The position numbers were made by a program, and so were the translations under genes. From Macrostomum lignano (Eukaryota): a stretch of 64,000 nucleotides of DNA. The notes below the pieces were generated by a model. That model had not been told where the DNA came from. It saw only the letters and a list, made by a program, of their open reading frames with translations, and ran no database searches. The DNA lies in contig NIVC01000029.1 of the NCBI GenBank assembly GCA_002269645.1, forward strand, positions 992,001 to 1,056,000, read 5' to 3'. Positions 1,510 to 27,162 of this stretch are shown piece by piece. How positions within the stretch are numbered: the first letter of the stretch is position 1; each line of letters opens with the position of its first letter.

Positions 1510-2776
<1,267 letters not shown>

Positions 2777-3100
2777 ACACCAACTGCCCTGAGGTTTTTA
2801 TATTGGTACCGAAAAAATAAGCTTACACACGCGATGTAATCTCGCGATACGTTGAAAATGTTTATCAACTGGCTTCTTGTATTTATTTTTTCTCTTCTTC
2901 ACATATCGCCTAAAATAATATACGAGTAAACTATAACAAACCAGAACTCTTTCGATGCAGCTTTAACTCGTGCCAGAGCAACACACCAGCATAGACTGAT
3001 CGGTTGTACTTGTCTCGTTATTTTTATGTGCTTAAAACTCATACATATGGTTACATTTGAAAGTAGGGTCAGTATCGGTTAATAAAGATAATTAATAGTA

Positions 3101-4400
3101 GAACTACCAAGAGGGGGGGAATTCCCCCCCCCCCCTGACAATATTTTTTGCTGCACCGGAACGGAGCAACGCAGGCACACGAAGTTCAAGAACACGGGCT
3201 AACTTTTTGTTGCGAACCTTCTCAAACAAGAATCAAGTCGCCAGCCCTTCGGACCGTCGAGATATTCGACGATTCTGCCAGAAGGTCGGATTTTTCCCAT
3301 AAGCGCTAGTGTATTCAGTACACCCCTGTGCGCCAATCAGCACTGCGCCTCAGTGCAGCCTTGCCAAGCCTCCAAATTTCATCAGCACGTCGACCAAATG
3401 TGTCTGCATCAGCTCTGACTTCGTTGGTCAGAGCCTCAACTGCCGGACACCTTCAGCTAGTCTCCTAAGCATTTAGCCATCACCCCGACGCCGTCGGCAC
3501 CTTCAACGGGTGGCACCAGGGGAGTAAGGACACCTGAGCGTGATTTTTCATCATGCTCTTAACATTTCTGAATCATTAAAAGATGAAAAAACCGATTGAA
3601 TTTACTGGCTTCTTAAAAGCATAACCCTTTCTGCATAAAAATTGGGTTCAATATTATAGTTGAATAAACTAAACAGCTTCTCGAATAAAATATGTATGTA
3701 GCTCGTATGCATAAAAGTATGTGTAATAATAATATAAATATACAGCAACATGAGTTCAAGCTTAACTATAGCAATGTCCGTGCTTTAAAAATTCTGAGAG
3801 CTTCAGAAATGTAAAATCACGCTCAGGTGTCCTTACTCCCCTGGTGCCACCTGTTGAAGGTGCCGACGGCGTCGGGGTGATGGCTGAATGCTTGACTGAC
3901 TAGCTGAGGATGTCTGGCGGTTGATTCGTGCCCACTGTCGAGGCTTGATCGGTGAAACTAGAGAAATTCGCATCAAGGTGTTCATAGTCACCTGGTGCCA
4001 CCTGTTGAAGGTCTAGAAGCTCCGTCTGGGTGAAGGCCAGTAACCAACGAAGTCAGAGCTGATGCAGACACATTTGGTCGACGTGCTGATGAAATTTGGA
4101 GGCTTGGCAAGGCTGCACTGAGGCGCAGTGCTGATTGGCGCACAGGGGTGTACTGAATACACTAGCACTTATGGGAAAAATCCGACCTTCTGGCAGAATC
4201 GTCGAATATCTCGACGGTCCGAAGGGCTGGCGACTTGATTCTTGTTTGAGAAGGTGCGCAAAAAAAAGTTAGCCCGTGTTCTCGAACTTCGTGAGCCGGC
4301 GTTGCTCCGTTCTGGCGCACCAAAAAATATTGTCCACCTCTTGGTAGTTCGACGGGCGGAAAAATGGCTTGGTATTCCTACTGTTAATACGCTCGTATTT
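3101..4400. mobile_element. Unclassified dispersed repeat family R1 (about 450 bp, GC hairpin near one end): two copies in inverted orientation
   Basis: 3101-3548 is the reverse complement of about 3813-4345. The same family occurs at 8614-9085, 16938-17236 and 17445-17835. A GGGGGGAATTCCCCCC-type hairpin precedes CTTGGTAGTTC. Confidence 0.7.
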
Positions 4401-6536: not shown

Positions 6537-9500
6537 ATGAAGCTTCTGGCCTGCGTTCTGCTTGTTGCATCGGTAATTGAAAGTCTGATTGCCGCGACTT
6601 CGGGACTGTGTAAGTTAAAGAAATAAGTTGAGATGTTTTTGATAATTTTTCATTTAAAAAAAACAGCAATAATTTTGATGCTTCAGGCCGACTCCAAGTC
6701 ACGCGCAAAGCGATCGCCAGCTCATGGCAGTCATCTCACTATACGAGCTCTTATACTAGTACATCAAGGTGCTTTTACACTCGATCAGAAATCAGGACGG
6801 GACAGTGGGACTTCATTCACTCCGGAGATCGCAACTCTTCTGCAGTTGACGGATACCATTGGTTTGTCCTTTTGCTGAATCAAAGTGAAAGAATTCGGTC
6901 TGTCACTGTCGAAAGTAGAGGTGAGGGAGTTTCTGCTGCCAAATTTATGTATTTTTGCGAATATATATTCTGCGAAGGCACCAAGTCTACTATGTCATGA
7001 AAAAATGGAATCAAAAAAATTTCAGATGTACCAGGATATTCAGTAGAGTTCCGTGCAGCAGACGTTGAGCTCTTTGCCTCACAGTCGGACCTGAGCAGCC
7101 AGCTCGGGTCTGAGCACTGCGGCTCTCGGCAAATCAGTTCGGTTTTCAATTCAAAACCGTCGGCTTGGAGCTACTGCGGTAAAACAAAATCAAAAATAGA
7201 TAAAGGAGAACACTTGACTGTAAAATGCGACCGAACAGTAAGTACATTCCAGCAATTTGATGGGTCACTTACAATGATTTATAGATTTTATATTTAGAAC
7301 ATTAGTGTTGACACTTAAAAGTGTGACTACTAAAATTTTGTAAACTTTCAGGTCCGCATGTTGCTGCTTAGAAAGTTCGTTGCGAATCTGACAAATAGCT
7401 ACCATCAGTGCATGAACTTTGTGAACATGTGGCTTAATCGCATCGACTTTGAGGGTGAGTTAAATTGTGTATGCTTGCTCTAATATGAGAAGGCATGTTG
7501 GCATATAAGCATTGAGATATTTCTAGTTAAGATGAAAAAAATTTAATTTTTCGATCTGATTTGAAATGGATTTCAGTTTGGTAGATGCACACAAATCAGA
7601 AATCAGAATGACTTCGTACTTTCAGGTCCGCAAAGTCGATACAAAATCTCCACAGAGTTGGGCATCTGCAATGCAGCAACTCCAAGAGCTGATGTCAAAG
7701 TCACCTTTGAGTCTCCAGACGCATCCAAGCACTTGTGCAGAGCATTCGACTCTAAAGGCCAGCAGCTGACAATTAGAGCCGTGAAAAATCCAACCTGCGA
7801 CGTGGCTGACAATTTGCTGAGGTCCCAGTGGCTGTGCTCAAACTGCAGCAGCTCAGCCAATGTGTCTGTAATCTGCGATGCTAATCGGCATCAAGCTAAA
7901 ACAACTATTGGCACAGAATGCCCAAAAAATAGTAAGTTTTTTTAGCAAAAGTAAATGGCAATACTGGACAGACATTGGCGTCAAGTAATACGATTTGAAT
8001 CTTCGGTTAAAAAAACTATTTTAGAACCTTGGCCGCTGGTAATAGTCCTGACAGTTGTTTTTATTTTGTTAATATTGGCATCCGCTTTATTCGTCTTTGC
8101 TCGCAAGAAGGTAAGTATTGCATAGTACAAAGCTCCAAGCAAAAGAGCAAGATTGGTATTGATGCAACAATTACCTTGAGCTAATTTTTGTTTTTACAAA
8201 CCATCAGTTCTGCAGCCAGCCTCAAAGCAACAAAGATGAACCCCCAGCGGTCTCTTCTCATCCAATGGCCGCTTTGAACTGCGATGCGCCTCAGCAGAAA
8301 GCCGTGGCAGCAACCACAACCGATGTCACCCAGCCCAGCATATCGGTGCTGGAAGCAGAAGTTAATGAGGATAGCAATAGTTCTGAACTCTTCCGGGTGA
8401 GTCTGCGGATGATTGGAGAAGCGACTTTTTATATTTTGAGTAAAAGAGCGAAACCATAACAACATTTCATTTTTTATCTTTTCTTAAAAGCCTCAGTTAT
8501 GATTGGCCTGTGCTGATCTATCTTTCTATAGTTGTTTGCGAAAGTACGATTCTCAACGCTGAAATATATCCTCATATCAAAGCTATGCACATCTACGCCG
8601 AGGATGCTCAGCAGTTGAGGCTTGATCAGCGAAACTAGAGAAATTCGCAACAAGGGTGTCCATAGTCACCTGGTGCCACCTGCTGTAGGTCCAGAAGCCA
8701 GTAACCAACGAAGCCAGAGCTGATGCAGACGCATGTGGTCGACGTGCTGATGAAATTTGGAGACTTGGCAAGGCTGCACTAAGGCATAGTGCTGATTGGC
8801 GCACAGGGGTGTACTGAATACACTAGCGCTTATGGGAAAAATCTGACCTTCTGGCAGAATCGTCGAATATCTCGACGGTTCAGAGGGCTGAAGAATTGGT
8901 TCTTGTTTGATAAGGTGTACGTGCAACAAAAACTTAGCCCGTGTTCTTGAATTTCGTGTGCCTGCGTTGCTTCGTTTTGGCGCAGCAAAAGAAATTGTCA
9001 GGGAGGGATTCTATATGAAAAAAGGAAAATCCCCACCTTGGTTGTTTGACGGGCGGAAAAATGGCTTGGCATTCCTACTGTTAAAAGCGCAATTTGTCTC
9101 TTAAAAATATGATTTTTTGAGACGAAAATTCGACTTTTTAAAGCGCCTAATGGACGCTTTCTTACATTTCGATATTACGAAAATCACACGAAACTACATG
9201 AATCACATGAAACTCGTAGCATGTGTTTGCTTCGAGTTGGCTTGATAGTTGAGCTAACCAAGTTGATAGTTAAGCCAGGAGTTTAGTTTCTGAGCAGAAC
9301 AGATTTTTAAGCGCGAGGACATTTGAGGTCATGGCTTACGAGCTCGTACCATATATAGAAGTTATTCAAATAGGAGCAAATCGAAAAAACTCGATTTGTT
9401 TTCACTGCTGTGCGTGAGTCACAGTCTTGAAATAATCTCTTCCGAATGTTCCTCGCGTTAGTACTCGAGCAAGTAGTAATTATGTAAATTGAATAAGTCT

Positions 9501-9755
9501 ATATTATTTCTCTAAGCAAAAACAACGGCAATTTCTAGTGGCCATCGGTCGTATGCCATAAAATCGAACGTTGCTACCACTACTTGTTGAATTTGTCAAT
9601 CACCACTTCAGAGACAGATAACGAGCGAGTGCTGCTATGATACGGTTAACCCCGACGAACAGATGATGGAGTTGTCGCAGAGCAGTCGGGTCAATAGCGA
9701 TGCCACCGAATACTTGGAGATCATCTCCGATGGTATTGAACAGCAATCTGAATGA
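6537..9755 (+). CDS. Receptor paralog B: SP - F-type-lectin-like - Cys-rich/FN3-like - TM - ITIM-like/ITSM tail (about 448 aa)
   Basis: Exons 6537-6609 (MKLLACVLLVASVIESLIAATSGL), 6687-6920, 7026-7237, 7352-7454, 7626-7931, 8025-8110 (TM), 8208-8396 and 9612-9755 (CCYDTV...TEYLEIISDGI). All GT-AG with consistent phases; total 1347 nt, open. Confidence 0.85.
8614..9085 (+). mobile_element. R1 dispersed repeat copy in the last intron of B
   Basis: High similarity to about 3950-4400 and 17445-17835. Confidence 0.75.
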
Positions 9756-10559
9756 TAATTGTTCTGTTTTCATGGACACGTCTACGGAGTACTACTAGGT
9801 ATAATCATACAGAATTACATGTACTAAATTACTCCATATCTTTAGAAAGTAATCAACACTCCATGTAGGTATTCATAGCAAAACTTGTTGTGACTCACAT
9901 TTTTATGCTTTCTTCGAAGAAATTTTCGCCTTAACAACTTTTTTCCGATACGTGAATTGTCCATATTTGTTTATATTGGCTAAGTGTTAAAAACGGCCTA
10001 CTCATTCGTTAACGCACTGTTCAAAATTTTCCATGAGTTTTTTTCTTGTTATTTTTTTGAAAGTATACAGTATATTCATAAGAATTTCTGCGTGTTTGAA
10101 TTTGTTAGTTTGAATACATGCTGGTTTTCCTGTATGTACACATGTATTTCATCTATCAATCAACGCTACATTTATGGGATTATTCCCTAACTAAAATTGT
10201 GAGAACATCTCATCTCAAAAACCCCATCTTTGATTCCATAAAGACAACCAAAAAAAATACAGAAAAATTCGCGCTAACCACTTAAAGATGAGCAATGCGA
10301 GTGGAACATACTAGGGAGTATGTTTTAAACAATTTACACTTTCTTGCTAGGATTCTTGCTAAAATTAGCATTCAATCGAATGATCTTCAAATAAATTAAT
10401 TCAGGTGCTACATTGTAAGTATAAATGCACAAATGCATATATTTATTTCAAGCGCTTCCCAAGGTTACATGCCGGTAGATACATGTTTAAAACTAGAATT
10501 CAGTCTGGAAGAGGATCCTGGGTCGATGTAGGTCTTCATACATCGACTTTTGGGGACAT

Positions 10560-11897
10560 AAGTCGGGACACCGACAGGGATAGAGATGGGGTCAGGGATA
10601 GGAACACGAACAAGGACATGGGTCATAGACAGGGACAGAAAAAAGCCATGGGTCAGAGATAGGGACAAAGGGGACAGAGACATGGATCAGAGACAGGGAC
10701 AAGGGGGACAGAGACATGGATCAGAGACAGGGACAAGGGGGACAGAGACATGGGTCAGAGACAGGAACAGGGACATGGGTCAGAGACAGGAACAGGGACA
10801 TGGGTCAGAGACAGGGACAGGAACATGGGTCAGAGACAGGGACAGGAACATTGGTCAGAAACAAGAACAGGAAAAAACCATGGGTCAGAGACAGGGACAA
10901 GGGGGACAGAGACATGGATCAGAGACAGGGACAAGGGGGACAGAGACATGGATCAGAGACAAGGACAAGGGGGACAGAGACATGGATCAGAGACAGGGAC
11001 AAGGGGGACAGAGACATGGATCAGAGACAGGGACAAGGGGGACAGAGACATGGGTCAGAGACAGGGACAGGAACATGGGTCAGAGACAGGGACAGGAACA
11101 TTGGTCAGAAACAAGGACAGGAAAAAACCATGGGTCAGAGACAGGGACAAGGGGGACAGAGACATGGATCAGAGACAGGGACAAGGGGGACAGAGACATG
11201 GGTCAGAGACAGGGACAAGGGGGACAGAGACATGGGTCAGAGACAGGGACAGGAACATGGGTCAGAGACAGGGACAGGAACATTGGTCAGAAACAAGGAC
11301 AGGAAAAAACCATGGGTCAGAGACAGGGACAAGGGGGACAGAGACATGGGTCAGAGACAGGGACAAGGGGGACAGAGACATGGATCAGAGACAGGGACAA
11401 GGGGGACAGAGACATGGGTCAGAGACAGGAACAGGGACATGGGTCAGAGACAGGGACAGGAACATGGGTCAGAGACAGGGACAGGAACATGGGTCAGAGA
11501 CAGGGACAGGAACATGGGTCAGAGACAGGGACAGGAACATGGGTCAGAGACAGGGACAGGAACATGGGTCAGAAACAAGGACAGGAAAAAACCATGGGTC
11601 ACAGACAGGGACAAGGGGGACAGGGACATGGGTCAGAGACAGGGACAAGGGGGACAGAGACATGGATCAGAGACAGGGACAAGGGGGACAGAGACATGGG
11701 TCAGAGACAGGAACAGGGACATGGGTCAGAGACAGGGACAGGAACATGGGTCAGAGACAGGGACAGGAACATGGGTCAGAGACAGGGACAGGAACATGGG
11801 TCAGAGACAGGGACAGGAACATGGGTCAGAAACAAGGACAGGAAAAAACCATGGGTCAGAGACAGGGACAAGGGGGACAGGGATGGAGACAGAGACA
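10560..11897. repeat. Complex purine-rich minisatellite (CATGGGTCAGAGACAGGGACAAG... units of about 23-31 bp)
   Basis: Visible tandem units; all three + frames are open only because of base composition. Confidence 0.95.
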
Positions 11898-12962
11898 GGA
11901 AGTCGTGTCTCACAGCTCAACACCGAGAAGAAAATGATTACGAACGATTTCTATTCTGAATGCACGCTAGACGTTTGTTGTCGTTATGTCGTTCTGATCC
12001 CAGCTTAAATCGGTATTACTCGTAGGTTGCACAATGATCATTCATCAAAGCTAAAAGGATTGATAACAATGTTTTTAACTGAATGGTGCACCACATCAAT
12101 TTGATGATCAAATAGGTCCGTCAAAGTTTACGTCTTTGTGCTGGATTGCAGGATGGCATCTGTCGTCGCCTAAAACCAGATTCAACAGGAACCAAGTCAA
12201 CATATTGTGCACTAGATTTAGTTCGTACTCTAACTATTTTAGGCTGCTAACTACTGATCGTCTTCTCGTCCAGCGCCTCGGGAGAATATAGCAGCCACAC
12301 GACAGGGGGTCTTTTTCAATTTTAAAATTTTCGGTAAGCGATTTCTCACATACGCGATACATCGCTTCGTGACCATATAATGATGCAGCTGTTACCAGAA
12401 TATTGCAACTATTGTTTACTTGTAGCTGGAGTTTTGAAATTGTTGCACACAGCGGAGGTGAGCTTACAAAACGCTGAATTTCACTGACCAGAGATCCAGT
12501 ATATTACAGCATCGTTAAAGACAATAATTCGTGAAATTAGCTATTATTATTGAAGTGAGGGGCTTCCAGAATATAATCGAAACGGCCGAGACAGAACCAC
12601 CTAGACCTGAAAGATCTACGTAAATAGCTAAAGATTTATAAACCGAACGGAACACGAGGTAAACAGGGTTCTTTAAATAGTCAAAGATGAATTTACAATT
12701 TAATGATAGCCCTTCAAGCAGATTATGGTAAGTGTCCAAAATGTCCAAATGCACACTAATAATGTAAACTAGTTGGTTTCAAACGCTTTGCCAAAACAAA
12801 TTTGGCTAGGAAATGAGCGTCAGCTGCGCTGCAGGTTGGTATAAATATTCTGAATATTCGCGAATGAAAAGCAATATCATTAACGTTCATTGCAGAGTGA
12901 CGAAATTTAGTTCAGCGATTGCAGTCTTACAAGCGTAAGCTTTAAAGATACTTTTATTGAGT

Positions 12963-15900
12963 ATGATTAATTCCGCACTGATATCTGCTTTAATTTACAT
13001 TTTTATGGCAACTTGCCTGCTCCAATATTTTGCGGAGTCTGCATTTGAATGTAAGTAACAGAAATTTTCGTAAATGTCTCAATAGTCAATAATAAATTCT
13101 ATCACAGTTTTGAATGCTTACATGCATTACATATTTTAAATTACTACTAGGTACTGAATTTGTAACTACTGGTGCAGGAGAAAAGACCTGGCAGTCATCG
13201 AGTTTCAAAGAGTACACTAAAGGCCCGTTTATTTGTGGGATTGGGGGAAGTCAGTTGGACGGGGCCTTCAAATCAGCTGACGAAGGCTCAGCCGCTGACA
13301 AAGGCTATCACTGGTTGGCCGTCCAGCTTAGAAGTACTGTTTGGACAGATGGGTTTGTTATCTCACGTGAGTATATCTATTCATATATTATGGTTATTGA
13401 TTTTATGATAATATTTAATTTTAATATGCAAGTAAAGTGGTATCCCCAAAATGCAGCAATTACAAGCGAAAGCCAGCTAGCAGAGAGAATTGAAGTTTGG
13501 ACAACAACAGAAACAATTGGATTTGGTTCTGAAAAGTGCAACTCCAGAAATATGAGCTCAGTATTTGAGACTAACAAGAAATATTGGACTTTCTGTGGAT
13601 CTTCTAAGCCAACTGCAATTCAAGTGAACTGTTCCAGTGTCCAGGAGGTGAGCTTATCAGTCTATAATTCAGTAAAGGTGTGTTAATAACTTAACACACT
13701 TATATACCAAGCAATTCCCTCAAAAAAATTCAGGCCAAAACAGTACTGCTTCGCAAGCCTGCGTGGAACAACAAAACCAACGCAATTGAGAGCATGGCTT
13801 TTAGTATTTTGGCCTATAAGTATATCTCGATCGATAGTGAGTTAAGATTACATACTTTTTACTCTTTTTCATTAGCCATAAAATACATTTATTTATTCTT
13901 TCAGTTACCTTTGACATAGCACCGCCGTCTAATATAAGCTCGAATACCAGTGCCAAGGTGAGATGCAATGTGAGTTGCATTGATAGTTTGGCAAGTATCA
14001 AATTAATACACTTGAGCACTAACCGGACACTTGCAACTGGAAATGAGACCTATGTAATCGACTCTGTGAATGAGGAAGATTATGGAGTCTATGCGTGCAG
14101 TGTTGGTGGAGTTGTTGTCAGCTCTGGCTATCTATCAGTTGCTTGTGAGTTGTCCAGTTCTCATTGAAATTAGTCCATTAAGATTAGACACACCAGACTT
14201 GATTCATTTTATCATTTTGGCTAGGCATTACAGTACCCATAAAAATTAATTCATTTATACTTTTCAGCTAAGGAAACTAAAGAGCTTCAAAGGCCATCCT
14301 CACCTGAACTTACTCAGTTCTACATATACATATTGATGGCAGTTTCCTCGATTCTGTTAATAGCTGTTGTCGCAGGAGCGATATTTGCTTGTAGAAAAAT
14401 GGTATTAATATGCAACTTTTCTGATCTTTTGTGTCTTTCCTTATGTACAATCCATGCGCCTACGCAGCAATTAAAGTACAGAATTATTAATTTAAATAAC
14501 AAAATATTAAAATATTTCCAACAGGCTATTGGAAGCCATCAAACGCTTGAACGAAAGCTAGCAACTGTAAGGTGAGTAATTTATGCTACACATATATATA
14601 GTAATTTGCTAGAACGACTTGTTTATGTGTCGTTCAATGAACAACAAGATTATTGGTCAAGAAACAATTTTCTAGCTTCTGAGAAACAAGGACCACTGGA
14701 ACATCTAGTCTAGTAGTCCTTGCTGAGAAATACAGAACGTATTTGTATTTGTGTGAGTCAAACTGTCTATATACCAGTTTTGTAGCTTTTTAAGAACTAT
14801 TAAAAGAGCTATTAAAAGAATCCAATAAAAAAACTTAGGTTTTCATTCACTAAGTTAGACAACTTAAAGTTTATTGCTCGAGTAAATTGAATCTTTAATT
14901 AGGCAATATCAACAGGCAGCTAAAAATGATATATTGCGTAAAATAGGAAGCTTTTATTCGGACTAGACTGAAATCAAACACGTTTGCGATTTCATGTCTA
15001 AATAGAATTTGCTATCATATAGTTACTGATGGCTATTAGATTTAGCTACCGAGCTAATGATACTGAGCTATTTGTTATGAGTGTTTCTAAGAAAGAAGGG
15101 AGAAGCGAGGTACCCTATCCTTCTACGTGCTACGTGTATTTGTCGGTCGACCGCTTTTAGTCTTATTCAGGCACTGATTGAATATAATTGTTAGCCATGC
15201 ATATGGATTGAGATATATAGCTATATAATGAAATTATAATTAGTGTGACAGTACCTGCATGTAAATCAAACTATTTCGATGTGGGCAGCTAATCCAAGCC
15301 AAAATACCTGTTTTTAGAGTCAATCTATTAAACCTTGCATGCATAAAATTTATAATAGCTATTAAAATAATTTTTATAAATTTATCACGAGAAAAAATAT
15401 TTACATGAATTCACATCAACGTTGCCTATAAAGTTGAGGATGTAAAAATTAACACATTTGGTCTAGTCGTAAGATTCGATAAAGAATCAGGCGCAATCTG
15501 CCACCGCATCCATTTTAGAGCCAGAAGTTCGCAGGAAATCGCCTTTTTTCCACATTTATCCCCTTTGGGGAAGCCTCTTCGTAGAGCACAGTCAAGTTCC
15601 CATTTAGATCTGAACAACAATTTTTAGCCTTGATTTTGTTCTTTGACTTTTCGCTTCCAAATTGAGTTCAATTCACACATAAAGCATTTCTCCGTGTGTC
15701 AGCAATGTGAAGGAAGGACTTGCGCGACATCAAAGAACTCGGCCACAAATTGACGGAAAATATTCGAAAACGTTTCGTTCGAAAAGTCTCCTCCAGGGAG
15801 CCTTGTACCGGAACCAATGTCCATGTGTGTTAATTTATCAGCTCTAAAGCTGTTGGAATACTGCGAGAAAATAAAATTTATTGGATTGCTAAAACATAAT

Positions 15901-16759
15901 TGTATCATTGTATAAGTCTTTCAATGAATGGAACCTACTACGCATTACTCCACCCTTACATAAAAAATGTTTCAATTGCTTTTTCCAGACACTCAACTGA
16001 GAAAGTTTCAAATGAAGAACCACCAACGCCTGACAACGGAGTGGCGGTGAGGCATGAAAATTTGCATCCAAATTCTGCTATTTGCATGGTTGAACTTCCA
16101 AAGTCTAATGACAACTATCAGGTCAGTCAGAGTAAAAAATCCATTGAGAAAGCATCTTCGTGCTCAATTAAACTGTCTGCGAAAGTGTCTGAAATTCATA
16201 TTAACTAGTAATTTCCCCATGGTTCAAAGTCAAAAAAAGATTTTTAAATATCCTAAGTCAAAAAGATCAGACACAGGATTGAGTTGTAAATATTTTTCTT
16301 CGATTCTCTGTATACAGTGATGCATCAGATGAAAAGACATTTGTATTGAAAAAAGTAACAAACAGTGATTTTACATGTATTGCTTTCAATAAAAGAAGCA
16401 GCTCGGCATAGTTTGGGACTACAGCAGGTAAATATAATTATTTACACGCTAGTAATGCATAACTGCCATCAATTATTTTTTTTAATATCGCAACTCAAGT
16501 ATTTACCGAAGTAAAATAGTCGCTTATATACAACTTATAGTGGCAGTTTTCCCAATAAAAATTTACGGATTTGTAAGACAAATTTAGTTTAAAACTACTT
16601 CAGCTTCAGTCAGATATCCGATATATAATAATACTTCAGGAAGGAAACAGCTGCACCTACGCTTCGCTCATGCCTTCAACAGCTGAACCAAATTCTAACG
16701 AACAGCGGCCAGAAAGTGAAGTCACGGAATATTTGATGATTATTAAGGATGGTATTTGA
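12963..16759 (+). CDS. Receptor paralog C: SP - F-type-lectin-like - Ig - TM - ITIM-like/ITSM tail
   Basis: Exons 12963-13050 (signal peptide), 13151-13366, 13433-13647, 13734-13836 (103 nt), 13905-14144 (Ig: VRCNVSC...DYGVYAC), 14268-14401 (TM), 14525-14571, 15989-16046 (or -16121) and 16640-16759 (CTYASL...TEYLMIIKDGI*). Phases are consistent. Confidence 0.8.
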
Positions 16760-16937
16760 TACTGAAGAAAGAATAGTTATTAACCAACATTGTGACTGTG
16801 TTCTAGCTCGTAGAAGCTTTGTAATTGGAAGCATGTAATTCTAAATTAAAATCTACAATGTTTTGAGGAAATATTTACATGCATGATAAAATTTAGTAAT
16901 TTATTAAACTACGTGCATATGAATGCTTTAACAGTAA

Positions 16938-17835
16938 GCCAACTCTTTGTTGCGCACCTTCTCAAACAATAATCAAGTCGCCAGCCGTCCGGAACGTCGA
17001 GATATTCGACGATTCTGCTAGAAGGTCGGATTTTTCCCATAAGCGCTAGTGTATTCAGTTCACCCCTGTGCGCCAATCAGCAATTTCACCAGCACGTCGA
17101 TCACATGCGTCTGCATCAGCTCTGGCTTCGTTGGTCACTGGCCTTCACCCAGGCGGAGCTTCTAGACCTTCAACAGGTGGCACCAGGTGACTATGGACAC
17201 CCTGATGCGAATTTCTCTAGTTTCGCTGATCAAGCATTAATAATGGGCTAACATTAACACCTGGTCATTTTCAGCTAGACTCTCAAACGTGAGACGTGAT
17301 GACGTAATTAGTTAATTGAACCGTAAATTGAACCGAATTTTCGCCAAGAGAAAAAATGACAAAAAATTATCAACTTTTCTATATGGACTCAAGATCAAGT
17401 AGAATTAACAAAAGTTGCTAAAACAATTTTTAAATTCATTTTTTCGGTGTCCATAGTCACCTGGTGCCACCTGTTGAAGGTCTAGAAGCTCCGCCTGGGT
17501 GAAGGCCAGTGACCAACGAAGCTAGAGCTGATGCAGACACATGTGGTCGACGTGCTGGTGAAATTTGGAGGCTTGGCAAGGCTGCACTGAGGCGCAGTGC
17601 TGATTGGCGCACAGGGGTGAACTGAATACACTGGCGCTTATGGGAAAAATCGGACTTCCTAGAAAAATCGTTGATTATCTCGACGTTCCAGAGGGCTGGC
17701 GACTTGATTCTTGTTTGAGAGGGTGCGCAACAAATAGTTGGCCCGTGTTCTTGAATTTCGTGTGCCTGCGTTGCTCCGTTCCGGCGCAGCAAAAAAGTTG
17801 TCGGGGGGGATCCCCCCCTCTTGGTAGTTCTGCTG
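16938..17835. mobile_element. R1 dispersed repeat, second inverted pair
   Basis: 16938-17236 (minus, truncated) and 17445-17835 (plus) match the copies at 3101-4400. Confidence 0.7.
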
Positions 17836-18474
17836 TAAATCGAATTCGTAGCTGTCTTTTGCGTTTTCAAGAATCCCCCACAGCGCAAGTGAAATAAAAA
17901 TCAGCAAAATGGAATACTTAGTCTTTAAATTACTCGTAATCTAAGAGCTCTGTACTTTTATGGGCTGTTTTTAAACACCTTTTAGTAAGCATCTCATTCC
18001 GATTAATTCACTCAAACTCGAAATGCCTACACTCGTCTGAGCATTGTATTTCTTTTCATTCGATTTTTCTGTTTTAAAGTACGACTCCAGATCCTCATTT
18101 CTACTTTTATGATAAAATTATTACATTTTTAAATTCAAGTGCCTAACTGTACATTTCTCAAAATCTGAGAGACTTGAATTAAATATTTGGCTAACTAATG
18201 CACATATGTAACTTAGGAGGAAAGAGTAGCGAAAATCAGTGAACGATGTTAAATGTAACTCAAAACATATAACTCAAAGCCCATGCAGTCACCGAGCCTC
18301 AACAACCAGAGTTTCAGATGACCAATTATGACGTGAAAAACCTGGCTATTTTAGGGAAAATACCTGAATCAGGATGAAATCGAATGTTCTAAGTGGTAGA
18401 ATTATTGATAGTTCGAGTAGTAGCAAGTTAGGGGTCTTCGTGTTTTCATTTTTTCTCCTGATATCTTAGCGCCG

Positions 18475-18630
18475 AACCTGAACCAAGCATCCCACCTACC
18501 TCGAACATCGAACCCGGGGCCAAAACCCAAACCCGGTACTAAACCCAAACCCAGTTCCAAAACCCAAATCCAGTATCAAAACCAAAATCCTGTACCAATA
18601 TCCGAACCCAGTACCAAAACCCGAACCAAA
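18475..18630. repeat. Degenerate 18-bp tandem repeat (CGAACCCAGTACCAAAAC-like)
   Basis: About 8 degenerate units visible. Confidence 0.7.
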
Positions 18631-18881
18631 TTTAATATGAAAATATAATAATTTATAATCAACCATAGTTCACAGCTCTTGGTTTTATTTGATGACCATT
18701 CTATAATTTATAATTTCGAAATCCTGGATATGTTTTTGCGAGTTATCAAGTTATTGAGATGGAGCGAGAATATATTCGTGTTTAAAATGGTCACGATGAT
18801 TCTCTGGCGACGTTAGCTCCAAATAGTTACGCTCCATATAGTTACTTATAGTTATTGCCGAATACAGAATCAAGCGCTTCC

Positions 18882-21800
18882 TCAATCGCTAACGTAAACT
18901 GACCGAGGCGGCGAAACGTTGTCAGTCCTATTGGTTGTCATGGCTACCATGTCATCCACGTAGACGCTTTGAGCAGCTCGCTGCATTCTCAGCTCGGCTG
19001 GAGGATCGCTGGGTTGGTTAGGAGGATGAGCACAACTCTGGAACTTTTAAGTGTGGCCGTTTATCAAAGTTATCAAATAATTTTTCGGAATTAATTTTTT
19101 CTAAATTTATTTTGGATGGGATTCAGTTCGATATATAGCTCTTTTTAAAACAAAATCTTGCTCAGTTTGATGCCTTGCAGATAACATGAAGACTACTGCC
19201 TCTTATTACAGACCTTTGACTCTCAATCTTACTATTTACATTAAGATTTCATGTCAAGCTTACCTTCTCGTAGTAGATCAGGATTGCAAGGGATATCAAT
19301 ATGATTAATACAATTATCTCGGTCAATAACACGACTAACAGCCAAAAATCTGAAAGTTTGATCATAGAAGGCTTCATTTTACTATTCAAAGAATGTTCAA
19401 TAACTATTTCGTAGATAAATGATAAACAACTTACTCTCATACACGTAGGGACAGCGTGTTTTGATAAGCTTTCTAACTTGATGCTGATCAGCCTGACAGA
19501 TTACAGACACATTGGCTGAGCTGCTGCAGTTTGAGCACAGCCACTGGGACCTCAGCACATTGTCAGCCACATCGCATGTTGGATTTTTCAGCGCAGTAAT
19601 TGTCAGCTGCTGGCCTTTAGAGTCGAATGCTCTGCACACGTGCGTGGATGCGTCTGGCGACTCAAATGTGACTTTGACATCACTGGTTGGAGATATGAAT
19701 TTGCAGATGCCCAACTCTGTGGAGATTTCGTGACGACTTTGCGGACCTGAAGAATAAAAACTTAAGAATTTTAGAGCACTTTGATTTGTTTTTGTTCAGT
19801 TGAAGTAAATCTCTACTTTGCCTCTCTATTGTCTACCCTGATTTACTCCTTGGCTGTCCAAAGAGCTTCTGGTGTTTGGCGATTTTCTCCGCTAGATACT
19901 GCTCAGCAATTTTTCATTGAATTTGAAACAAAAAGGGTACAGACAGAAACTACTGTATACGAAACATTGATTTCCTACCAGTAATTTTGTTAATTACAAG
20001 GTACGAGTTTCAGAGAAACGATTGGTCTCTCTAATCTGGTGTATAGCTATTAAGTTCCTTATAACTTTTCCAACCTATTTGCGCTTACACACTGAATTTA
20101 TTCAAAGATTTGCTTACTGAACTAATTGATTTTTGGCTATGGTAGCAAGGCTGGCACAGCAGTATTTAATTTGGTCCAACAAGCATCAATTTGGTCCATT
20201 GCAGCTATGAAACCTAATCATGAATTACAGCTGAGTAATGCAATTTATTTCATCAAATTTCACTGTACTAATCAATACAAGGTGACGTCAAAAATGCAAT
20301 TTTCTCAGCAATAACAAAATAGCATATTTTAGCATGACCAAAACTCCGCTTCGATCACAAGCACATTGCGTTCGTTTGACAGTCTAGCCTATGTTCCACG
20401 ATTCTGTGACTGATCTTGCTTCTCTGCGGAAGATGCAAATGAAGTATTGCTTTTAGTATTGCTTGTGACAGATATGTCTAAATTAAAATCTAAGGGGTGA
20501 ACTTATGGACCAAATCGATGCAGCGGGTCCATGAAATTTGCTAGCAGGAAATCTGCTAGCCGAAGTTTGCTAGCCGAAATGTGCTAGCCGAAATCTGCTA
20601 GCCGAAGTTTGCTAGCCGAAATGTGCTAGCCGAAATCCGCTAGCCGAAATCTGCTAGCCGAAATCTGCTAGCCGAAGTTTGCTAGCAGGAATTTCTTTGT
20701 AGCTAGCACTCGTACGTCAAGAATCAGAATGTAATTTATATACAAAATGTGCTTGTTAATTTTATTCTTCAAGTTCGTTGGCTCTGTTGTTTTGTTTGCC
20801 CGCTCTCGGTAGTCAGAGTAAATTAAGAAGGCAATCTGTTGTGGGGACGACTTAATCTGGACGACTTAATCTGCCACCTAGCCTTCGCCGTGGGTTCTCG
20901 TACATGTACGTGTTAAAACGCAATCAGTAGATGACGTCATAGACAAAAAGAAAATAAGATTTAGGTTTTAACGTAGGTGGATTAAAAAGTTCATATACAA
21001 GATATTGAATAAAGTAAATATATTACATCCATGATCACAGGGTAAGAGCTTGTGGGCCACACCTGCATAGAGTTTTTGCTTGTACACAATGGAAAATATC
21101 TATACATTAACAATACATATAGCGATAGTAAATTGTACCTTGGAAATACATGTATCTAACTATAGATACTGTACACCAACATGTGTGTTACTGTCTGCTA
21201 AAGTACTGTATATGCTAAAACTGCACTTGGAAATCGTCAAAATCATTTATATTTTTGTCCTATTTTACTCGTAGACATTTGATAATGTTTTAGCATTATC
21301 AGCTGTAAGGCCGTAGTTCAGGTAGCTCAGGCAGCTGTAGTTCAGGTAGTTAAATTTAAACTTATCTATACACACAACTTTCAGTCTTAATGGCTGGTAG
21401 TGGCAGTATATGGTATATAAGTTATATATTTACTCGTACGAATCAAAGCAGCTCAAATCGGAATCAAAACACAGCAAATAACATGCAACAGCTACGAGAG
21501 CAAGGCAGCTAGCAAAATCCTCGCTAGCAAAATTCCTGCTAGCAGATTTCGGCTAGCAAAATCCTCGCTAGCAAACTTCAGCTAGCAGATTTCGGCTAGC
21601 ACATTTCGGCTAGCAAACTTCGGCTAGCACATTTCGGCTAGCACATTTCGGCTAGCAAACTTCGGCTGGCAAACTTCGGCTAGCACATTTCGGCTAGCAA
21701 ACTTCGGCTGGCAAACTTCGGCAAGCACATTTCGGCTAGCGGATTTCGGCTAGCAAACTTCGGCTAGCAAACTTCGGCTAGCAAACTTCAGCTAGCAGAT

Positions 21801-23469
21801 TTCGGCTAGCACATTTCGGCTAGCACATTTCGGCTAGCAAACTTCGGCTAGCACATTTCGGCTAGCACATTTCGGCTAGCAAATTTCTCGCTAGCAAACT
21901 TCGGCTAGCAGATTTCCTGCTAGCAAATCTCGTACTCCCCGATGCAGCTGCTGTGCCAGCCTTTGCTACCATGGGCAAAAGCTCCATTACTTGTGGAAAC
22001 ATATCTTGGATTAAATTCAATGTGTCTAAGCCCTTATAATAGACACTAAGGAATACACGATTTTCAATCTGCGAGGTGTCGCATTTTTGGGGCTGTCAGA
22101 ATTTGAGGCGTCAACACAATTTTATTGGAACAGACGCCAGAACCAGGGGCGCCAGCAAAGCTACTGTCATATAATTTTTACAGCACAATGGGAAGTCGCT
22201 GCGTCACTCTTGCCGAACAGATGGCAACAAACCTGGCCTGAATCAGCCGCCACAGTAAATTATTGAAAAGCAATTGCAAGAATTTTAGCTCCAATTGTAC
22301 TTTAAATAAAGCATCTGAGGACTTTATGTACCATTTTACACTTCTTCTTTTCCAAATATCGTGCCTCTTTTACAAGCTATAAAATACGAACTATCATCAA
22401 CAATAAGTTCAGGAGAAAAAACTCAGTTTAATTTTTAAAAAGAAAATGTAACACATTCCTCATCGAGTATTTTTCTGGACACTAAGTACTATGTTGGGCA
22501 TTAACCGACTATTATTCTAAAACTAAAGCTAGAGATCTTATGGCTACTTGGATCCCAAGCTCACCCTCAGAGTCGATGCGATTTAGCCACATGTTCACAA
22601 AGTTCATGCACTGATGGTATCCATTTGTCAGATTCGCAACGAACTTTCTAAGCAGCAACATGCGGACCTGAAAGTTTACAAAACTCCACAGTAGTCAGAC
22701 TTTTAGTAGTCAACTCTTATTTCTTAAGATATGAAATCTATAAATCATTGTAAGAGACCCATCAAATTGCTGGAATGGACTTACTGTTCGGTCGCATTTT
22801 ATAGTCAAGTTTTCTTTATCTATTTTTGATTTTGTTTTACCACAGTAGCTCCAAGCCGACGGGTTTGAATTGAAGACCGAACTGATTTGCCGAGAGCTGC
22901 AGTGCTCAGACCCGAGCTGGCTGCTCAGGTCCGACTGTGAGGCAAACAGCTCAACGTCTGCTGCGCGGTCTTTTACATCGGGGTCAGCTGAAATGTTTTA
23001 TTTAAAAGTTTCATTCTGCATTTGCCTGGTCTCCATGTACCAGTGTTCATGAAGCACCACCAGAAACTCTCACTTCTACTCTCGACAGTGACAGACCGAA
23101 TTCTTTCACTTTGATTCAGCAGAATGGCAAACCAATGGTATCCGTTAACTGCAGACGAGTTGTTTTCTCCGGAGGTAAAAAAGTCCCACTGTCCCGTCCT
23201 GATTTCTGATCGAGAGTAAAAGCACCTTGATGTACTAGTATAAGAGCTCGTATAGTGAGATGACTGCCATGAGCTGGCGATCGCTTTGCGCGTGACTTGG
23301 AGTCGGCCTGAAAGTTTCATTTTTTAACCTGATAGTTTTCAAAACGAATAACTATTTGTATTGTTTGTTTTGAAGACCAACAAAGCTTTGACTCACACAA
23401 TCTTGAATTCGTCGCCACAATTCTTGCCATCAACAATGCGGAAATCAGGATGCTGAGCAAGATTTTCAT
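18882..23469 (-). CDS. Receptor paralog D: SP - F-type-lectin-like - Cys-rich/FN3-like - TM with Glu - divergent tail (about 390 aa if unspliced)
   Basis: Minus-strand exons 23469-23397 (MKILLSILISALLMARIVATNSRL), 23307-23074, 22987-22785, 22667-22565, 19746-19435, 19349-19264 (NFWLLVVLLTEIIVLIILISLAILIYYEK) and 19043-18882 (...SVYVDDM...RSVYVSD*). Exons 2-5 are close to B. The end of the tail is uncertain. Confidence 0.8.
20128..21982. mobile_element. MITE with about 40-bp imperfect TIR (ATGGTAGCAAGGCTGGCACAGCAG...), interrupted by the foldback element below
   Basis: About 20139-20200 is the reverse complement of 20507-20524 joined to 21949-21972 once the nested insert is removed. Confidence 0.55.
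20525..21939. mobile_element. Foldback/MULE-like non-autonomous element with 9-bp TSD and GCTAGC-module arms, in intron 4 of D
   Basis: TSD CGATGCAGC at 20516-20524 and 21940-21948. Termini GGGTCCATGA.../...CGTACTCCC. Arms are inverted arrays of about 14-bp GCTAGCCGAAATCT modules. Confidence 0.85.
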
Positions 23470-25991: not shown

Positions 25992-27162
25992 ATGAGTAGA
26001 TTCTCACTGATATTCTAGGCCGTCCAGACGACTGCATTGGCTATGGCACTTGTCAGCTCAGTGAGCTGTAAAAAATGTAAGTTTTGGTGACTATAACACT
26101 GCTTCGCTTTATGACTGTACGTAAGATTGCATCATGCCACATTTCAGGCCGAATTGAAGTCAGGAAAGGCTCCATTGAACGCTCCTGGCAGTCGTCGATT
26201 TTGGAAAATGATAGGTCGGCACATTGCTTTTATGAGCGGCCCGTTGGTGATGGCCAAGTCGGCAGCTACAAATATTTGCACACAGAGGAGAGCAAAAACG
26301 GAAATGATTCGGGAGCCGATGCAGGATTTCACTGGTTTGTGATAAAGCTAAAGAAGCCTGAACTGTGAATGTCAAAGTCAGAAGTCAGTCTTGCTTGTAA
26401 CATTTAGGAATAGCTTTTCAAGATCGTGCTTTTCTCTATTTTCTTCATTTTATAAATTTTTTTATTTCAACAGACTTAACCCAAAAAAACTTACGGAAAT
26501 CGGAGACGATTTAAACGCTCGAGCCGCAGACATTGAGATCTGGACGTCTCAGGCGGACCTGGATTTCGGGTCGGAGCACTGCAACTCAAAGAGCATCAGC
26601 TCTGTGTATGATAATGCAGTGAGCGGGACATGGCAGTTTTGCGGCAAGACGCCAACAAATGTTTCTCATGGAGAAACACTGACAGTTCCTTGTATCACGG
26701 ATCAGGTAACGATTTTTTGCGTGAAGTTTAAATTGAGTGGAAATGATTCAATTTTATCCACCAAATTATAGGCAAAATATAGAATAATTTAGAATTTATT
26801 AAGTTCTCAGTTTGGTACAGGGGGTGGTAGCCTGGTGGTTTGCGTCGGACTCTCGACTGGAGTTTCGATTCCCGATCGCACTGGAACTATTTGTGATCCC
26901 GAGAAAAGACACTAAACTCTGTATTGCTTCAGTTTCCCCCAGTTGTAAAATGGGTGCCAGCATTAGCTGGGGTAATTGAGGTTGTTGAGGTTGCGGTTGC
27001 ACATCTGGCCCAAATGGGGTAGGTGTAAATATTAAATTAATTACTTATTATTATTTATCAGGTTCGGATAATACTACTTCGAAAATATGTCGCCAATGAA
27101 ACTGTGCCACGAAAGCAGTGCATGAACTTTCGACATGTGGATTGACCTCCATGGCGTCAAAA
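25992..27162 (+). pseudogene. Receptor paralog E: pseudogene, SP + lectin exons only
   Basis: Exons 25992-26076 (TAG at 26016-26018 where F and G have Trp), 26148-26383 (10-nt deletion vs F/G), 26474-26705 (1-nt deletion) and 27062-27162 (2-nt deletion). Homology to F/G ends in intron 4 at about 27200. Confidence 0.85.
26812..27022 (+). mobile_element. tRNA-derived SINE with a CORE-like segment in intron 3 of E (orthologous copies at 31948-32230 in F and 62181-62372 in G)
   Basis: A-box-like TAGCCTGGTGG; B-box GGTTCGATTCCC (intact in the F copy); the segment ...CAGTTTCCCCAGTTGTAAAATGGG resembles the MIR/CORE motif CAGTTTCCTCATCTGTAAAATGGG. Confidence 0.6.

What the first reader, a model, noticed from the sequence alone, without database searches (positions are those of the whole stretch)
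6537..23469. B and D form an inverted 'paired receptor' couple: shared ectodomain, unrelated TM and tail, acidic residue in D's TM
Seen: exons 2-4 and intron 3 of B (+) and D (-) are near-identical and exon 5 is close, whereas the signal, TM and tail exons diverge strongly. D's TM contains a Glu (LLTEIIV, codon 19318-19320) and D has no TEYLxI exon. Knowledge: vertebrate paired receptors such as SIGLEC11/16 and SIGLEC5/14 keep ectodomains alike by gene conversion while signalling oppositely. Their activating members use a basic TM residue, so the acidic one here would need a different partner. The opposite-signalling reading is inference.
Basis: partly seen in the sequence, partly recalled or inferred. 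Interest (0 to 1): 0.75.

Follow-up and report, generated by a model that had tools for sequence, protein, structure and literature searches.

The report
Flatworm lectin-receptor pair, shared ectodomain
Two neighbouring, oppositely oriented flatworm (Macrostomum lignano) receptor genes share a recently copied sugar-binding-like outer part but have anciently different membrane and inner parts, which looks like the inhibitory/activating "paired receptors" of vertebrate immunity; no function has been tested.

Summary
The window is Macrostomum lignano DNA. B (+, 6537-9755, 8 exons) and D (-, 23469-18882, 7 exons) are intact GT-AG genes with the same exon lengths and phases.

B-D nucleotide identity is 94/93/96% in exons 2/3/4, 87% in intron 3 and 86% in exon 5. 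It is at shuffled level in exon 1, introns 1, 2, 5 and 6, the TM exon and the tail exon. Synonymous divergence is 0.12 (exons 2-4) and 0.23 (exon 5), against 0.9, 1.3 and saturated in exon 1, the TM exon and the tail. A third paralogue (P0002) is uniformly 0.3-0.5 from B in every exon. So D's ectodomain was copied from, or converted by, B's lineage (permutation p <= 1e-4).

B ends in CCYDTV-x19-TEYLEI, an ITIM/ITSM-like tandem kept in other family members. D has Glu in the TM core (codon 19320-19318), no such exon, and a 51-aa tail with two SVYV[D/S]D motifs.

Two corrections. The TM and tail exons are distantly homologous, not unrelated. An acidic TM residue has a vertebrate precedent (CD300C Glu191). 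The N-terminal domain is a divergent F-type-lectin-like fold, and the family was found only in Macrostomum.

Opposite signalling remains inference: no adaptor was found, and D's tail is not short.

The parts
6537..9755 (+). Gene B, 8 exons, 446 aa. It comprises a signal peptide, an F-lectin-like domain (exons 2-4), a 6-Cys domain (exon 5), a TM (exon 6) and a tail (exons 7-8).
   Evidence: 100% identical to UniRef A0A1I8J1S8.
18882..23469 (-). Gene D, 7 exons, 388 aa, with the same exon lengths and phases as B through exon 6. Intron 4 is 2.8 kb, against 171 bp in B.
   Evidence: From exon 3 onward identical to UniRef A0A1I8J0M2.
6682..6925 (+). Shared block 1 (B exon 2), matching D 23312-23069 at 94%.
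   Evidence: (I5).
7051..7459 (+). Shared block 2 (B exon 3 from RAADVELF, intron 3 and exon 4), matching D 22968-22560. Exon identity is 93-96% and intron 3 is 87%.
   Evidence: (I8).
7621..7901 (+). Shared block 3 (most of B exon 5), matching D 19751-19471 at 89%. It stops 30 nt before the exon end.
   Evidence: (I4).
6926..7050 (+). Patch where B is the outlier. In the 3' half of intron 2 and the first ~35 nt of exon 3, D resembles the third paralogue P0002 (72% overall, 35/36 around the acceptor) and B does not (50-56%).
8025..8110 (+). B TM exon (PWPLVIVLTVVFILLILASALFVFARKK), with no charged residue in the core.
19264..19349 (-). D TM exon (NFWLLVVLLTEIIVLIILISLAILIYYEK). It is 86 nt in phase 1, like B's.
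19318..19320 (-). GAG = Glu319, tenth residue of a 26-residue hydrophobic stretch. It is the only charged TM-core residue among the family members examined.
9630..9722 (+). B tail tandem tyrosine motifs: CCYDTV (9630-9647) and TEYLEI (9705-9722), with the tyrosines 25 residues apart. TEYLEI fits the ITSM consensus TxYxx[VI].
   Evidence: Equivalent tandems occur in C (CTYASL..TEYLMI, 16634-16756), the P0002 locus (TEYLDI), P0007 and P0013.
18885..18968 (-). D tail motifs SVYVDD (18968-18951) and SVYVSD (18902-18885), with the tyrosines 22 residues apart and Asp at +3. They fit none of ITIM, ITSM, ITAM or YxxPhi. The stop codon is at 18884-18882.
18685..18888 (-). Stretch just behind D's stop, in another frame. 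It holds an ITAM-like YSAI-x9-YLEL and a possible decayed relic of the ITIM/ITSM exon (HEYILAPSQ*LDNSQKHIQDFEIINYRMVIK*). Its status is unresolved.
   Evidence: 1/500 shuffles reach the score with C's last exon. There is no DNA-level similarity.

Best explanation
B and D are two members of a Macrostomum-specific family of single-pass surface receptors. Each has an F-type-lectin-like N-terminal domain, a cysteine-rich domain, a TM and a tyrosine-motif tail.

The two genes diverged long ago, as their signal, TM and tail exons show. Exons 2-4, and less recently exon 5, of D were later overwritten from B's lineage by ectopic gene conversion or a partial inverted copy. That exchange did not reach D's membrane and cytoplasmic exons. 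The result is a couple with about 83-88% identical ligand-binding parts wired to different signalling parts.

B carries the family's conserved ITIM-like/ITSM tandem (CCYDTV-x19-TEYLEI). I infer that after tyrosine phosphorylation it recruits a tandem-SH2 phosphatase or an SH2 adaptor and dampens signalling. D lacks that module, has a Glu buried in its TM helix, and has a different tail. I infer that D either couples through the Glu to a still unknown partner chain, as CD300C does with FcR-gamma, or acts as a non-inhibitory counterpart or decoy for the same ligand.

Shown: the gene models, the mosaic history, the motifs, the Glu, and the lectin-like fold. Inferred: ligand sharing, phosphorylation, partner, and the sign of signalling.
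For: Mosaic history:
- B-D dS is 0.117 in exons 2-4 and 0.23 in exon 5, against 0.91 in exon 1, 1.34 in the TM exon and saturated in the tail. B-P0002 dS is 0.30-0.48 in all exons.
- Site patterns favouring B=D versus B=P2 are 94:14 in exons 2-4, but 8:21, 10:27 and 15:69 in exon 1, the TM exon and the tail. Permutation p <= 1e-4.
- Intron 3 is kept at 87%, while introns 1, 2, 5 and 6 are at shuffled level (intron 4 was not aligned globally; BLAST found no match there). This rules out plain purifying selection.

Common ancestry of whole genes: identical exon lengths and phases, and reciprocal best weak hits between end exons.

Tail module conserved in paralogues, with Tyr-Tyr spacing of 24-27.

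D is the only member examined with a charged TM-core residue, and it has no ITIM/ITSM.

Precedent for a Glu-TM activating partner with a gene-converted ectodomain: CD300A/C (PMC12447643). A Syk-family kinase exists in flatworms (PMC2820527).

Lectin-like fold: the AF2 block-mean pLDDT is mostly 75-95 over residues 81-200. The top Foldseek hits are fucolectins 3cqo and 1k12, then CBM32 and FVIII C2. The family profile hits 3cqo at E 2.6e-5.
Against: - No functional data of any kind.
- D's tail is 51 aa with two tyrosines, not a short signal-less tail.
- No ITAM-bearing small TM protein is in the window, and none could be searched for in the proteome.
- D has replaced a His conserved in 8 of the 9 aligned family domains (F[IF]HSG becomes FFTSGE), so identical ligand binding is not assured.
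- B-D dN/dS of 0.54-0.74 fits relaxed constraint as well as diversifying pressure.
- YDTV and YLEI also fit the endocytic YxxPhi signal.
- Exon 5 site patterns are mixed (29:26:14).
- The family's biological role (immunity, adhesion or reproduction) is unknown.
Confidence: 0.5

Rival explanations
1. D is a by-product of patchy ectopic recombination in a repeat-rich gene cluster. On this reading it is a chimeric, weakly constrained paralogue or a decoy without signalling. Its TM Glu and odd tail are drift, and there is no paired function.
For: - B-D dN/dS is 0.54-0.74.
- D has lost a family-conserved His.
- A possible decayed relic of the ITIM/ITSM exon, with an in-frame stop, lies behind D's stop.
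- The mosaic is patchy with more than one donor: in the 6926-7050 region D resembles P0002, not B.
- D's intron 4 has swollen to 2.8 kb with minisatellites.
- No second D-type TM or tail appeared in the profile search of the 1.84-billion-representative library; the word-indexed search with D's TM+tail found nothing at all, not even D's own model.
Against: - D's reading frame and all six splice-site pairs are intact.
- The same D sequence, Glu included, appears in two protein models of an independent assembly (P0003, P0004).
- The conversion tracts respect exon edges and leave the signalling exons untouched.
Confidence: 0.3
2. The family is made of endocytic or adhesion lectin receptors rather than immune regulators. 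On this reading the tandem tyrosine motifs of B (YDTV, YLEI) are YxxPhi sorting signals, and D (YVDD, YVSD) is a surface-retained, non-internalising version of the same binding module.
For: - Both B motifs fit YxxPhi and neither D motif does.
- The ectodomain is lectin-like.
- The first B motif has Cys at -2 and is not a canonical ITIM.
Against: - The second motif is kept as [TV][EV]Y[LT]EI (TEYLEI, TEYLMI, TEYLDI, TEYTEI, TVYLEI) in divergent paralogues. That is tighter than YxxPhi needs and matches the ITSM consensus.
- The 24-27 residue Tyr-Tyr spacing is also kept, as expected for tandem SH2 binding (my knowledge of PD-1, BTLA and PECAM-1).
Confidence: 0.15
3. The B/D similarity is simply a recent whole-gene inverted duplication followed by fast divergence of the end exons, or an assembly artefact.
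For: Macrostomum assemblies are rich in recent duplicates. E, F and G in this window are such tandem copies, 87-92% identical with introns included.
Against: - dS is 0.9 to saturated in exon 1, the TM exon and the tail, against 0.12 in exons 2-4.
- Introns 1, 2, 5 and 6 do not align while intron 3 does; BLAST also finds nothing in intron 4.
- P0002 groups with B in the end exons but is the outgroup to B+D in exons 2-4.
- The flanks differ, and both genes have independent protein models.
Confidence: 0.03

Closest known systems
CD300A / CD300C (human and primate paired receptors)
   Same: They are neighbouring genes whose ectodomains are kept alike by gene conversion. The inhibitory member has ITIMs. 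The partner lacks them and has a glutamic acid in the TM that is needed for signalling via FcR-gamma (PMC12447643). This is the closest match to D's acidic TM residue.
   Different: CD300 has an Ig V-type ectodomain, whereas here it is an F-lectin-like plus Cys-rich ectodomain. CD300C's tail is short, while D's is 51 aa with two tyrosines. The adaptor is known for CD300C and unknown here. The animals are a vertebrate versus a flatworm, and there is no sequence homology.
SIGLEC11/16 and SIGLEC5/14
   Same: These are lectin receptors with 5' exons homogenised by gene conversion and 3' exons encoding opposite signalling modules (PMC5701461, listed). The membrane-distal motif of Siglecs (TEYSEI/V, my knowledge) is nearly the same string as B's TEYLEI.
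   Different: The activating Siglecs use a basic TM residue and DAP12. Siglec ectodomain identity is above 99%, whereas here it is 83-88% aa. Siglecs have an Ig fold and bind sialic acid, which is not expected in flatworms.
F-type lectins (eel agglutinin 1k12, striped bass FBP32 3cqo)
   Same: They are the best fold and profile matches of the N-terminal domain. The WW-R-V-D-L / V-T-I-x-N-R core aligns with HWFxxxL / VTVxxR. Both Arg positions of the sugar-binding motif align with conserved Arg in the family.
   Different: The match is very weak (15-16% identity, no Pfam hit). The fucose-binding His does not align with a conserved residue. F-lectins are mostly soluble, whereas this domain heads a membrane receptor with a tyrosine-motif tail.
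Hydractinia Alr gene complex (invertebrate receptor family with ITAM and ITIM tails)
   Same: It is an invertebrate, lineage-specific, clustered receptor family whose members carry ITIM-like or ITAM-like motifs (10.1101/2022.03.04.482883 / PMC9546547, listed).
   Different: It has Ig-like ectodomains and is cnidarian. I did not check that paper for pairs with converted ectodomains or a charged TM residue.

Membership tests
Paired (inhibitory/activating) surface receptors | Closely linked genes in one cluster | tested here: met
   B is at 6537-9755 (+) and D at 23469-18882 (-), convergent, with family member C (13114-16756, +) between them. There are seven family members in the 64 kb window.
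Paired (inhibitory/activating) surface receptors | Ectodomains much more alike than TM and cytoplasmic parts | tested here: met
   The ectodomain is 83% aa identical (lectin-like domain 88%), and exons 2-4 are 93-96% nt identical. The TM and tail exons are at shuffled level.
Paired (inhibitory/activating) surface receptors | Similarity due to gene conversion or concerted evolution rather than uniform recent duplication | tested here: met
   dS is 0.12-0.23 in the ectodomain exons against 0.9 to saturated elsewhere. The three-sequence site patterns switch along the gene, with permutation p <= 1e-4.
Paired (inhibitory/activating) surface receptors | One member with ITIM/ITSM in the tail | tested here: met
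   B's TEYLEI fits TxYxx[VI]. It is preceded by YDTV 25 residues upstream, which has a non-canonical -2 Cys. The module is conserved in paralogues. This is at motif level only; phosphorylation and SH2 binding were not testable.
Paired (inhibitory/activating) surface receptors | Other member lacks ITIM and has a charged residue in the TM | tested here: met
   D has Glu319 in the TM core and no [SIVLTC]xYxx[ILV] in the tail. The residue is acidic, as in CD300C, not basic as in most pairs.
Paired (inhibitory/activating) surface receptors | Activating member has a short tail without motifs of its own | tested here: not met
   D's tail exon encodes 51 aa with SVYVDD and SVYVSD.
Paired (inhibitory/activating) surface receptors | Association with an ITAM-bearing adaptor through the TM charge | not testable with these tools
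   No credible ITAM ORF was found in the window; hits are in satellites or AT-rich non-coding DNA. The M. lignano proteome could not be scanned.
Paired (inhibitory/activating) surface receptors | Same ligand, same cells, opposite signal | not testable with these tools
   There are no expression or binding data. D differs from B at a family-conserved His.
F-type lectin domain | Galactose-binding-like beta-sandwich fold closest to fucolectins | tested here: met
   The AF2 block-mean pLDDT is mostly 75-95 for residues 81-200. Foldseek ranks 3cqo and 1k12 first (E about 1e-4), followed by CBM32 and FVIII C2.
F-type lectin domain | Sequence-profile similarity | tested here: inconclusive
   The family profile against PDB sequences gives 3cqo E 2.6e-5, 1k12 0.016 and lectinolysin 0.05. 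No Pfam family reaches its threshold.
F-type lectin domain | His...Arg...Arg fucose-binding triad | tested here: inconclusive
   Both Arg positions align with conserved family Arg. The binding His aligns with a variable position, and the family's own conserved His sits 5 residues earlier.
Sushi/CCP domain (exon 5, the name UniProt gives B) | Recognisable Sushi profile or fold | tested here: inconclusive
   There is no Pfam hit. The AF2 pLDDT is below 50 over most of residues 207-308. Only the six-Cys pattern and a Trp are suggestive.

The most novel reading that the evidence does not exclude
Flatworms independently evolved a true inhibitory/activating paired-receptor system on a non-immunoglobulin, F-lectin-like scaffold. 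B would inhibit through its ITIM-like/ITSM tandem. D, kept ligand-matched to B by gene conversion, would activate through its TM glutamate and an undiscovered partner chain feeding a Syk-type kinase.
Probability: 0.2. Interest if true: 0.8.

Novelty: new variant of a known kind. Interest (0 to 1): 0.55.

Why it matters
Paired receptors with converted ectodomains and opposite signalling modules are regarded as a hallmark of vertebrate innate immunity under pathogen pressure.

Finding the same gene architecture in a free-living flatworm would be notable. The shared features are a cluster, ectodomain-restricted gene conversion, an ITSM-type tail on one gene, and a charged TM without an ITSM on the other. 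Here they sit on a lectin-like rather than Ig scaffold, in a family seen only in Macrostomum. That would argue the design is a convergent solution rather than a vertebrate invention.

It would also give an experimentally tractable invertebrate (RNAi and transgenesis exist for M. lignano) in which to ask what such pairs are for. If D turns out to be a drifting chimera, the locus is still a clean example of exon-bounded ectopic conversion in a lineage-specific receptor cluster.

Tried and rejected
- Pfam scan of B gave only noise.
- A word-indexed protein search with D's TM, tail and the downstream frame found nothing, not even D's own model, so it is uninformative.
No second-assembly DNA of the locus could therefore be obtained.
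- A search with gene C, meant to reach an annotated NCBI contig of this cluster, found only a UniRef protein without a contig.
- The P0002 locus has no D-like partner within 10 kb and has different flanks (an integrin gene upstream). It is a dispersed paralogue, not a homeologous copy of the cluster.
- The ITAM regex over six frames hit only satellites, AT-rich DNA and the out-of-frame stretch behind D's stop.
- I tried the alternative donor inside D exon 7 (used by the chimeric model P0004) with nearby acceptors. It gives no frame reaching the ITAM-like or relic stretch (reasoned).
- There is no DNA-level similarity between the region behind D and the terminal exons of B, C or P0002.
- A literature search for Macrostomum plus ITIM found no relevant paper.
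- Rejected as explanations: assembly artefact, uniform recent duplication, and purifying selection alone. See the rival explanations.

Full report
**What the window is.** The composition and the many microsatellites suggested a eukaryote. The spliced product of gene B is 100% identical to UniRef A0A1I8J1S8 of the free-living flatworm Macrostomum lignano. The only other hits were three M. lignano proteins.

A profile search of 1.84 billion representative proteins found 20 relatives at E <= 0.001. All seven looked up by name are M. lignano proteins. The family therefore looks lineage-specific.

**Gene models.** B (+) has eight exons: 6537-6609, 6687-6920, 7026-7237, 7352-7454, 7626-7931, 8025-8110, 8208-8396 and 9618-9755. 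D (-) has seven: 23469-23397, 23307-23074, 22987-22785, 22667-22565, 19746-19435, 19349-19264 and 19037-18882. All introns are GT-AG.

Exon lengths are 73/73, 234/234, 212/203, 103/103, 306/312 and 86/86 nt with the same phases. The genes are therefore colinear homologues from start to TM. D from exon 3 onward equals UniRef A0A1I8J0M2, and a second, chimeric model (A0A1I8G181) carries the same TM and tail up to PPR, where it uses another donor.

B and D are convergent and are not adjacent, because family member C (13114-16756, +) lies between them. The window holds seven family members.

**Checking the observation.** Self-BLAST finds just two B/D blocks: 6682-7459 vs 23312-22560, and 7621-7901 vs 19751-19471.

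| Segment | B-D nt identity |
|---|---|
| Exon 2 | 93.6% |
| Exon 3 | 92.6% |
| Intron 3 | 86.8% |
| Exon 4 | 96.1% |
| Exon 5 | 85.6% |
| Exon 1, introns 1, 2, 5, 6, TM exon, tail exon | no better than shuffled |

- The block edges sit within 5 nt of exon edges at three junctions.
- Glu is encoded at 19320-19318 inside FWLLVVLLTEIIVLIILISLAILIYY.
- There is no [ST]EYxx[ILV] exon on D's strand behind D.

'Near-identical' is somewhat generous, since the lectin-like domain is 88% aa identical and the whole ectodomain 83%.

**Is it conversion?** I used a dispersed paralogue, P0002 (locus L001 on NIVC01003065), as a third sequence.

| Segment | B-D dS | B-P0002 dS |
|---|---|---|
| Exon 1 | 0.91 | 0.30 |
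| Exons 2-4 | 0.117 | 0.48 |
| Exon 5 | 0.23 | 0.37 |
| TM exon | 1.34 | 0.30 |
| Tail exon 7 | saturated | 0.44 |

(All.)

Informative sites group B with D 94:14 in exons 2-4. They group B with P0002 21:8, 27:10 and 69:15 in exon 1, the TM exon and the tail. A GENECONV-style permutation gives p <= 1e-4. Exon 5 is mixed (29:26:14).

B is evenly distant from P0002 everywhere, and D-P0002 (0.55) is about equal to B-P0002 (0.48) in exons 2-4. The simplest history is that an old, divergent family member (D) had its ectodomain exons overwritten from B's lineage after B and P0002 split.

The exchange is patchy. Across the 3' half of intron 2 and the first ~35 nt of exon 3, D resembles P0002 (35/36 around the acceptor) and B is the outlier. 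More than one event or donor is therefore involved.

Uniform recent duplication, purifying selection alone and assembly error are excluded by these numbers.

**What the proteins are.** An AlphaFold model built on 15 family sequences is confident for the N-terminal domain, with block-mean pLDDT mostly 75-95 over residues 81-200.

- Foldseek ranks the fucolectins 3cqo and 1k12 first, followed by CBM32 modules and factor VIII C2.
- A profile of nine family domains hits 3cqo at E 2.6e-5 and 1k12 at 0.016.
- The two Arg of the F-lectin sugar site align with conserved Arg, but the binding His does not. Sugar binding is plausible, but fucose binding cannot be claimed.
- Pfam finds nothing.
- Exon 5 encodes a six-Cys domain that UniProt labels Sushi. 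Neither Pfam nor the model confirms this.

**Tails.** B ends in ...ITSECCYDTVNPDEQMMELSQSSRVNSDATEYLEIISDGIEQQSE. TEYLEI fits the ITSM consensus, and YDTV lies 25 residues upstream.

| Member | Motif pair | Source |
|---|---|---|
| C (16634-16756) | CTYASL...TEYLMI | |
| P0002 locus (L001 12060-12134, missed by its annotation) | TEYLDI | |
| P0007 | CSYLSV...TVYLEI | |
| P0013 | VVYAQV...TEYTEI | |

The Tyr-Tyr spacing is 24-27. Conservation of motif and spacing in otherwise unalignable tails argues for function. By my knowledge of PD-1, BTLA, PECAM-1 and the Siglecs, this is the layout that binds tandem-SH2 phosphatases.

D's tail (SCAHPPNQPSDPPAELRMQRAAQSVYVDDMVAMTTNRTDNVSPPRSVYVSD) starts like B's (FCSQPQSNKDEPPA...) but then differs. 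It has two SVYV[D/S]D motifs with Asp at +3, which fit none of ITIM, ITSM, ITAM or YxxPhi.

Among the family members with a TM that I could examine, only D has a charged residue in the core.

**Comparison with known systems.** The gene architecture meets most defining features of paired receptors: cluster, ectodomain-restricted similarity, conversion, an ITSM-type member, and a charged-TM member without one.

It fails one feature, since the activating member should have a short motif-less tail. The functional features (adaptor, same ligand, opposite sign) remain untested.

It is not. CD300C, the partner of inhibitory CD300A, has TM Glu191, which is needed for signalling through FcR-gamma, and its ectodomain is homogenised with CD300A by gene conversion (PMC12447643). 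That pair is the closest analogue. A Syk-family kinase is documented in flatworms (PMC2820527), so an ITAM-type route is not excluded in principle.

**Loose ends.**
- Right behind D's stop, in another frame, lies RLRKRLILYSAITISNYMERNYLELTSPENHRDHFKHEYILAPSQ*LDNSQKHIQDFEIINYRMVIK*.
- That stretch contains an ITAM-like YSAI-x9-YLEL (my post-hoc estimate of the chance is about 2%).
- It also contains a segment that aligns with C's terminal ITIM/ITSM exon, with only 1 of 500 shuffles reaching the score. The alignment is not found with three other queries or at the DNA level.
- If real, it is a decayed relic showing that D descends from an ITSM-bearing ancestor. I leave it unresolved.
- D has also replaced a His conserved in 8 of the 9 aligned family domains, which cautions against assuming identical ligand binding.

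**Verdict.**
- The evolutionary half of the interpretation, ectodomain-restricted conversion between an inverted pair, is well supported. I put it at about 0.9.
- The functional half, opposite signalling, is a reasonable but untested analogy. I put it at about 0.2-0.35 for true activation, with more weight on 'non-inhibitory counterpart or decoy'.
- I found no description of this family or of paired-type receptors in Macrostomum.
- I rate it a new variant of a known kind, with moderate-to-good interest.

Noticed in passing
window 53-1077, 13114-16756, 26075-27130, 31291-37702, 61512-63870 (+): Five more members of the same F-lectin-like receptor family (A, C, E, F, G) lie in the window. C has an Ig-like domain (DYGVYAC) where B and D have the six-Cys domain, and it ends in CTYASL..TEYLMI.
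   Followed up: partly
window 26135-26989, 31276-32124, 61548-62182; 27266-29115 vs 57120-58975: E, F and G are direct tandem copies 87-92% identical with their introns included. They are ordinary recent duplicates, in contrast to the B/D mosaic.
   Followed up: no
window 18685-18888 (-): Out of frame behind D's stop lie an ITAM-like YSAI-x9-YLEL and a possible decayed relic of the ITIM/ITSM exon, with two Tyr 23 residues apart and a stop between them. It is supported by only one of four protein queries (1/500 shuffles) and not at the DNA level.
   Followed up: partly
D residues 67-72 (window about 23183-23166, -): D reads FFTSGE where B and seven other aligned family domains read F[IF]H[ST]... 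A family-conserved His in the lectin-like domain is replaced by Thr in D only.
   Followed up: partly
L001 11594-11679 (P0002 TM exon): Paralogue P0002 has a Lys at the outer edge of its TM (ILFVVK|VLTVIF...). It probably snorkels at the boundary. I noted it only because a basic TM residue is what D's Glu would need in a partner.
   Followed up: no
L001 12060-12134: The P0002 locus has an unannotated terminal exon (SRRLNGDVTEYLDIVSIGVVRQPK*) with an AG acceptor in phase. The deposited model ends ...LFRKA instead.
   Followed up: partly
window 19747-22564 (D intron 4): D's intron 4 is 2.8 kb, against 171 bp in B. It holds two arrays of a 14-bp minisatellite in opposite orientation (20533-20686 and 21523-21932).
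   Followed up: no
window 10565-11900: A purine-rich tandem array (units of 25, 34 and 182 nt) lies 3' of B. It is free of stop codons in all three + frames for about 1.3 kb and has strong GC and AT skew.
   Followed up: no
window 3091-3430, 3892-4387, 8614-9084, 16938-17840: These are copies, 80-97% identical, of a dispersed repeat a few hundred bp long, some arranged as inverted pairs. One copy sits in B's intron 7 and one between C and D. The chimeric protein model P0004 reads into a copy of this repeat downstream of D.
   Followed up: no
window 1510-2779; 28412-30327; 58286-60601; 49821-51100; 54367-56150: Long simple arrays are present: (GACA)n of 1.27 kb, 15- and 16-bp minisatellites duplicated between two places in the window, and 23-bp satellites.
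   Followed up: no
UniRef A0A1I8J690 (P0022) and A0A1I8G181 (P0004): These public protein models are fusions. P0022 joins B to C, and P0004 joins D to repeat-derived sequence.
   Followed up: partly
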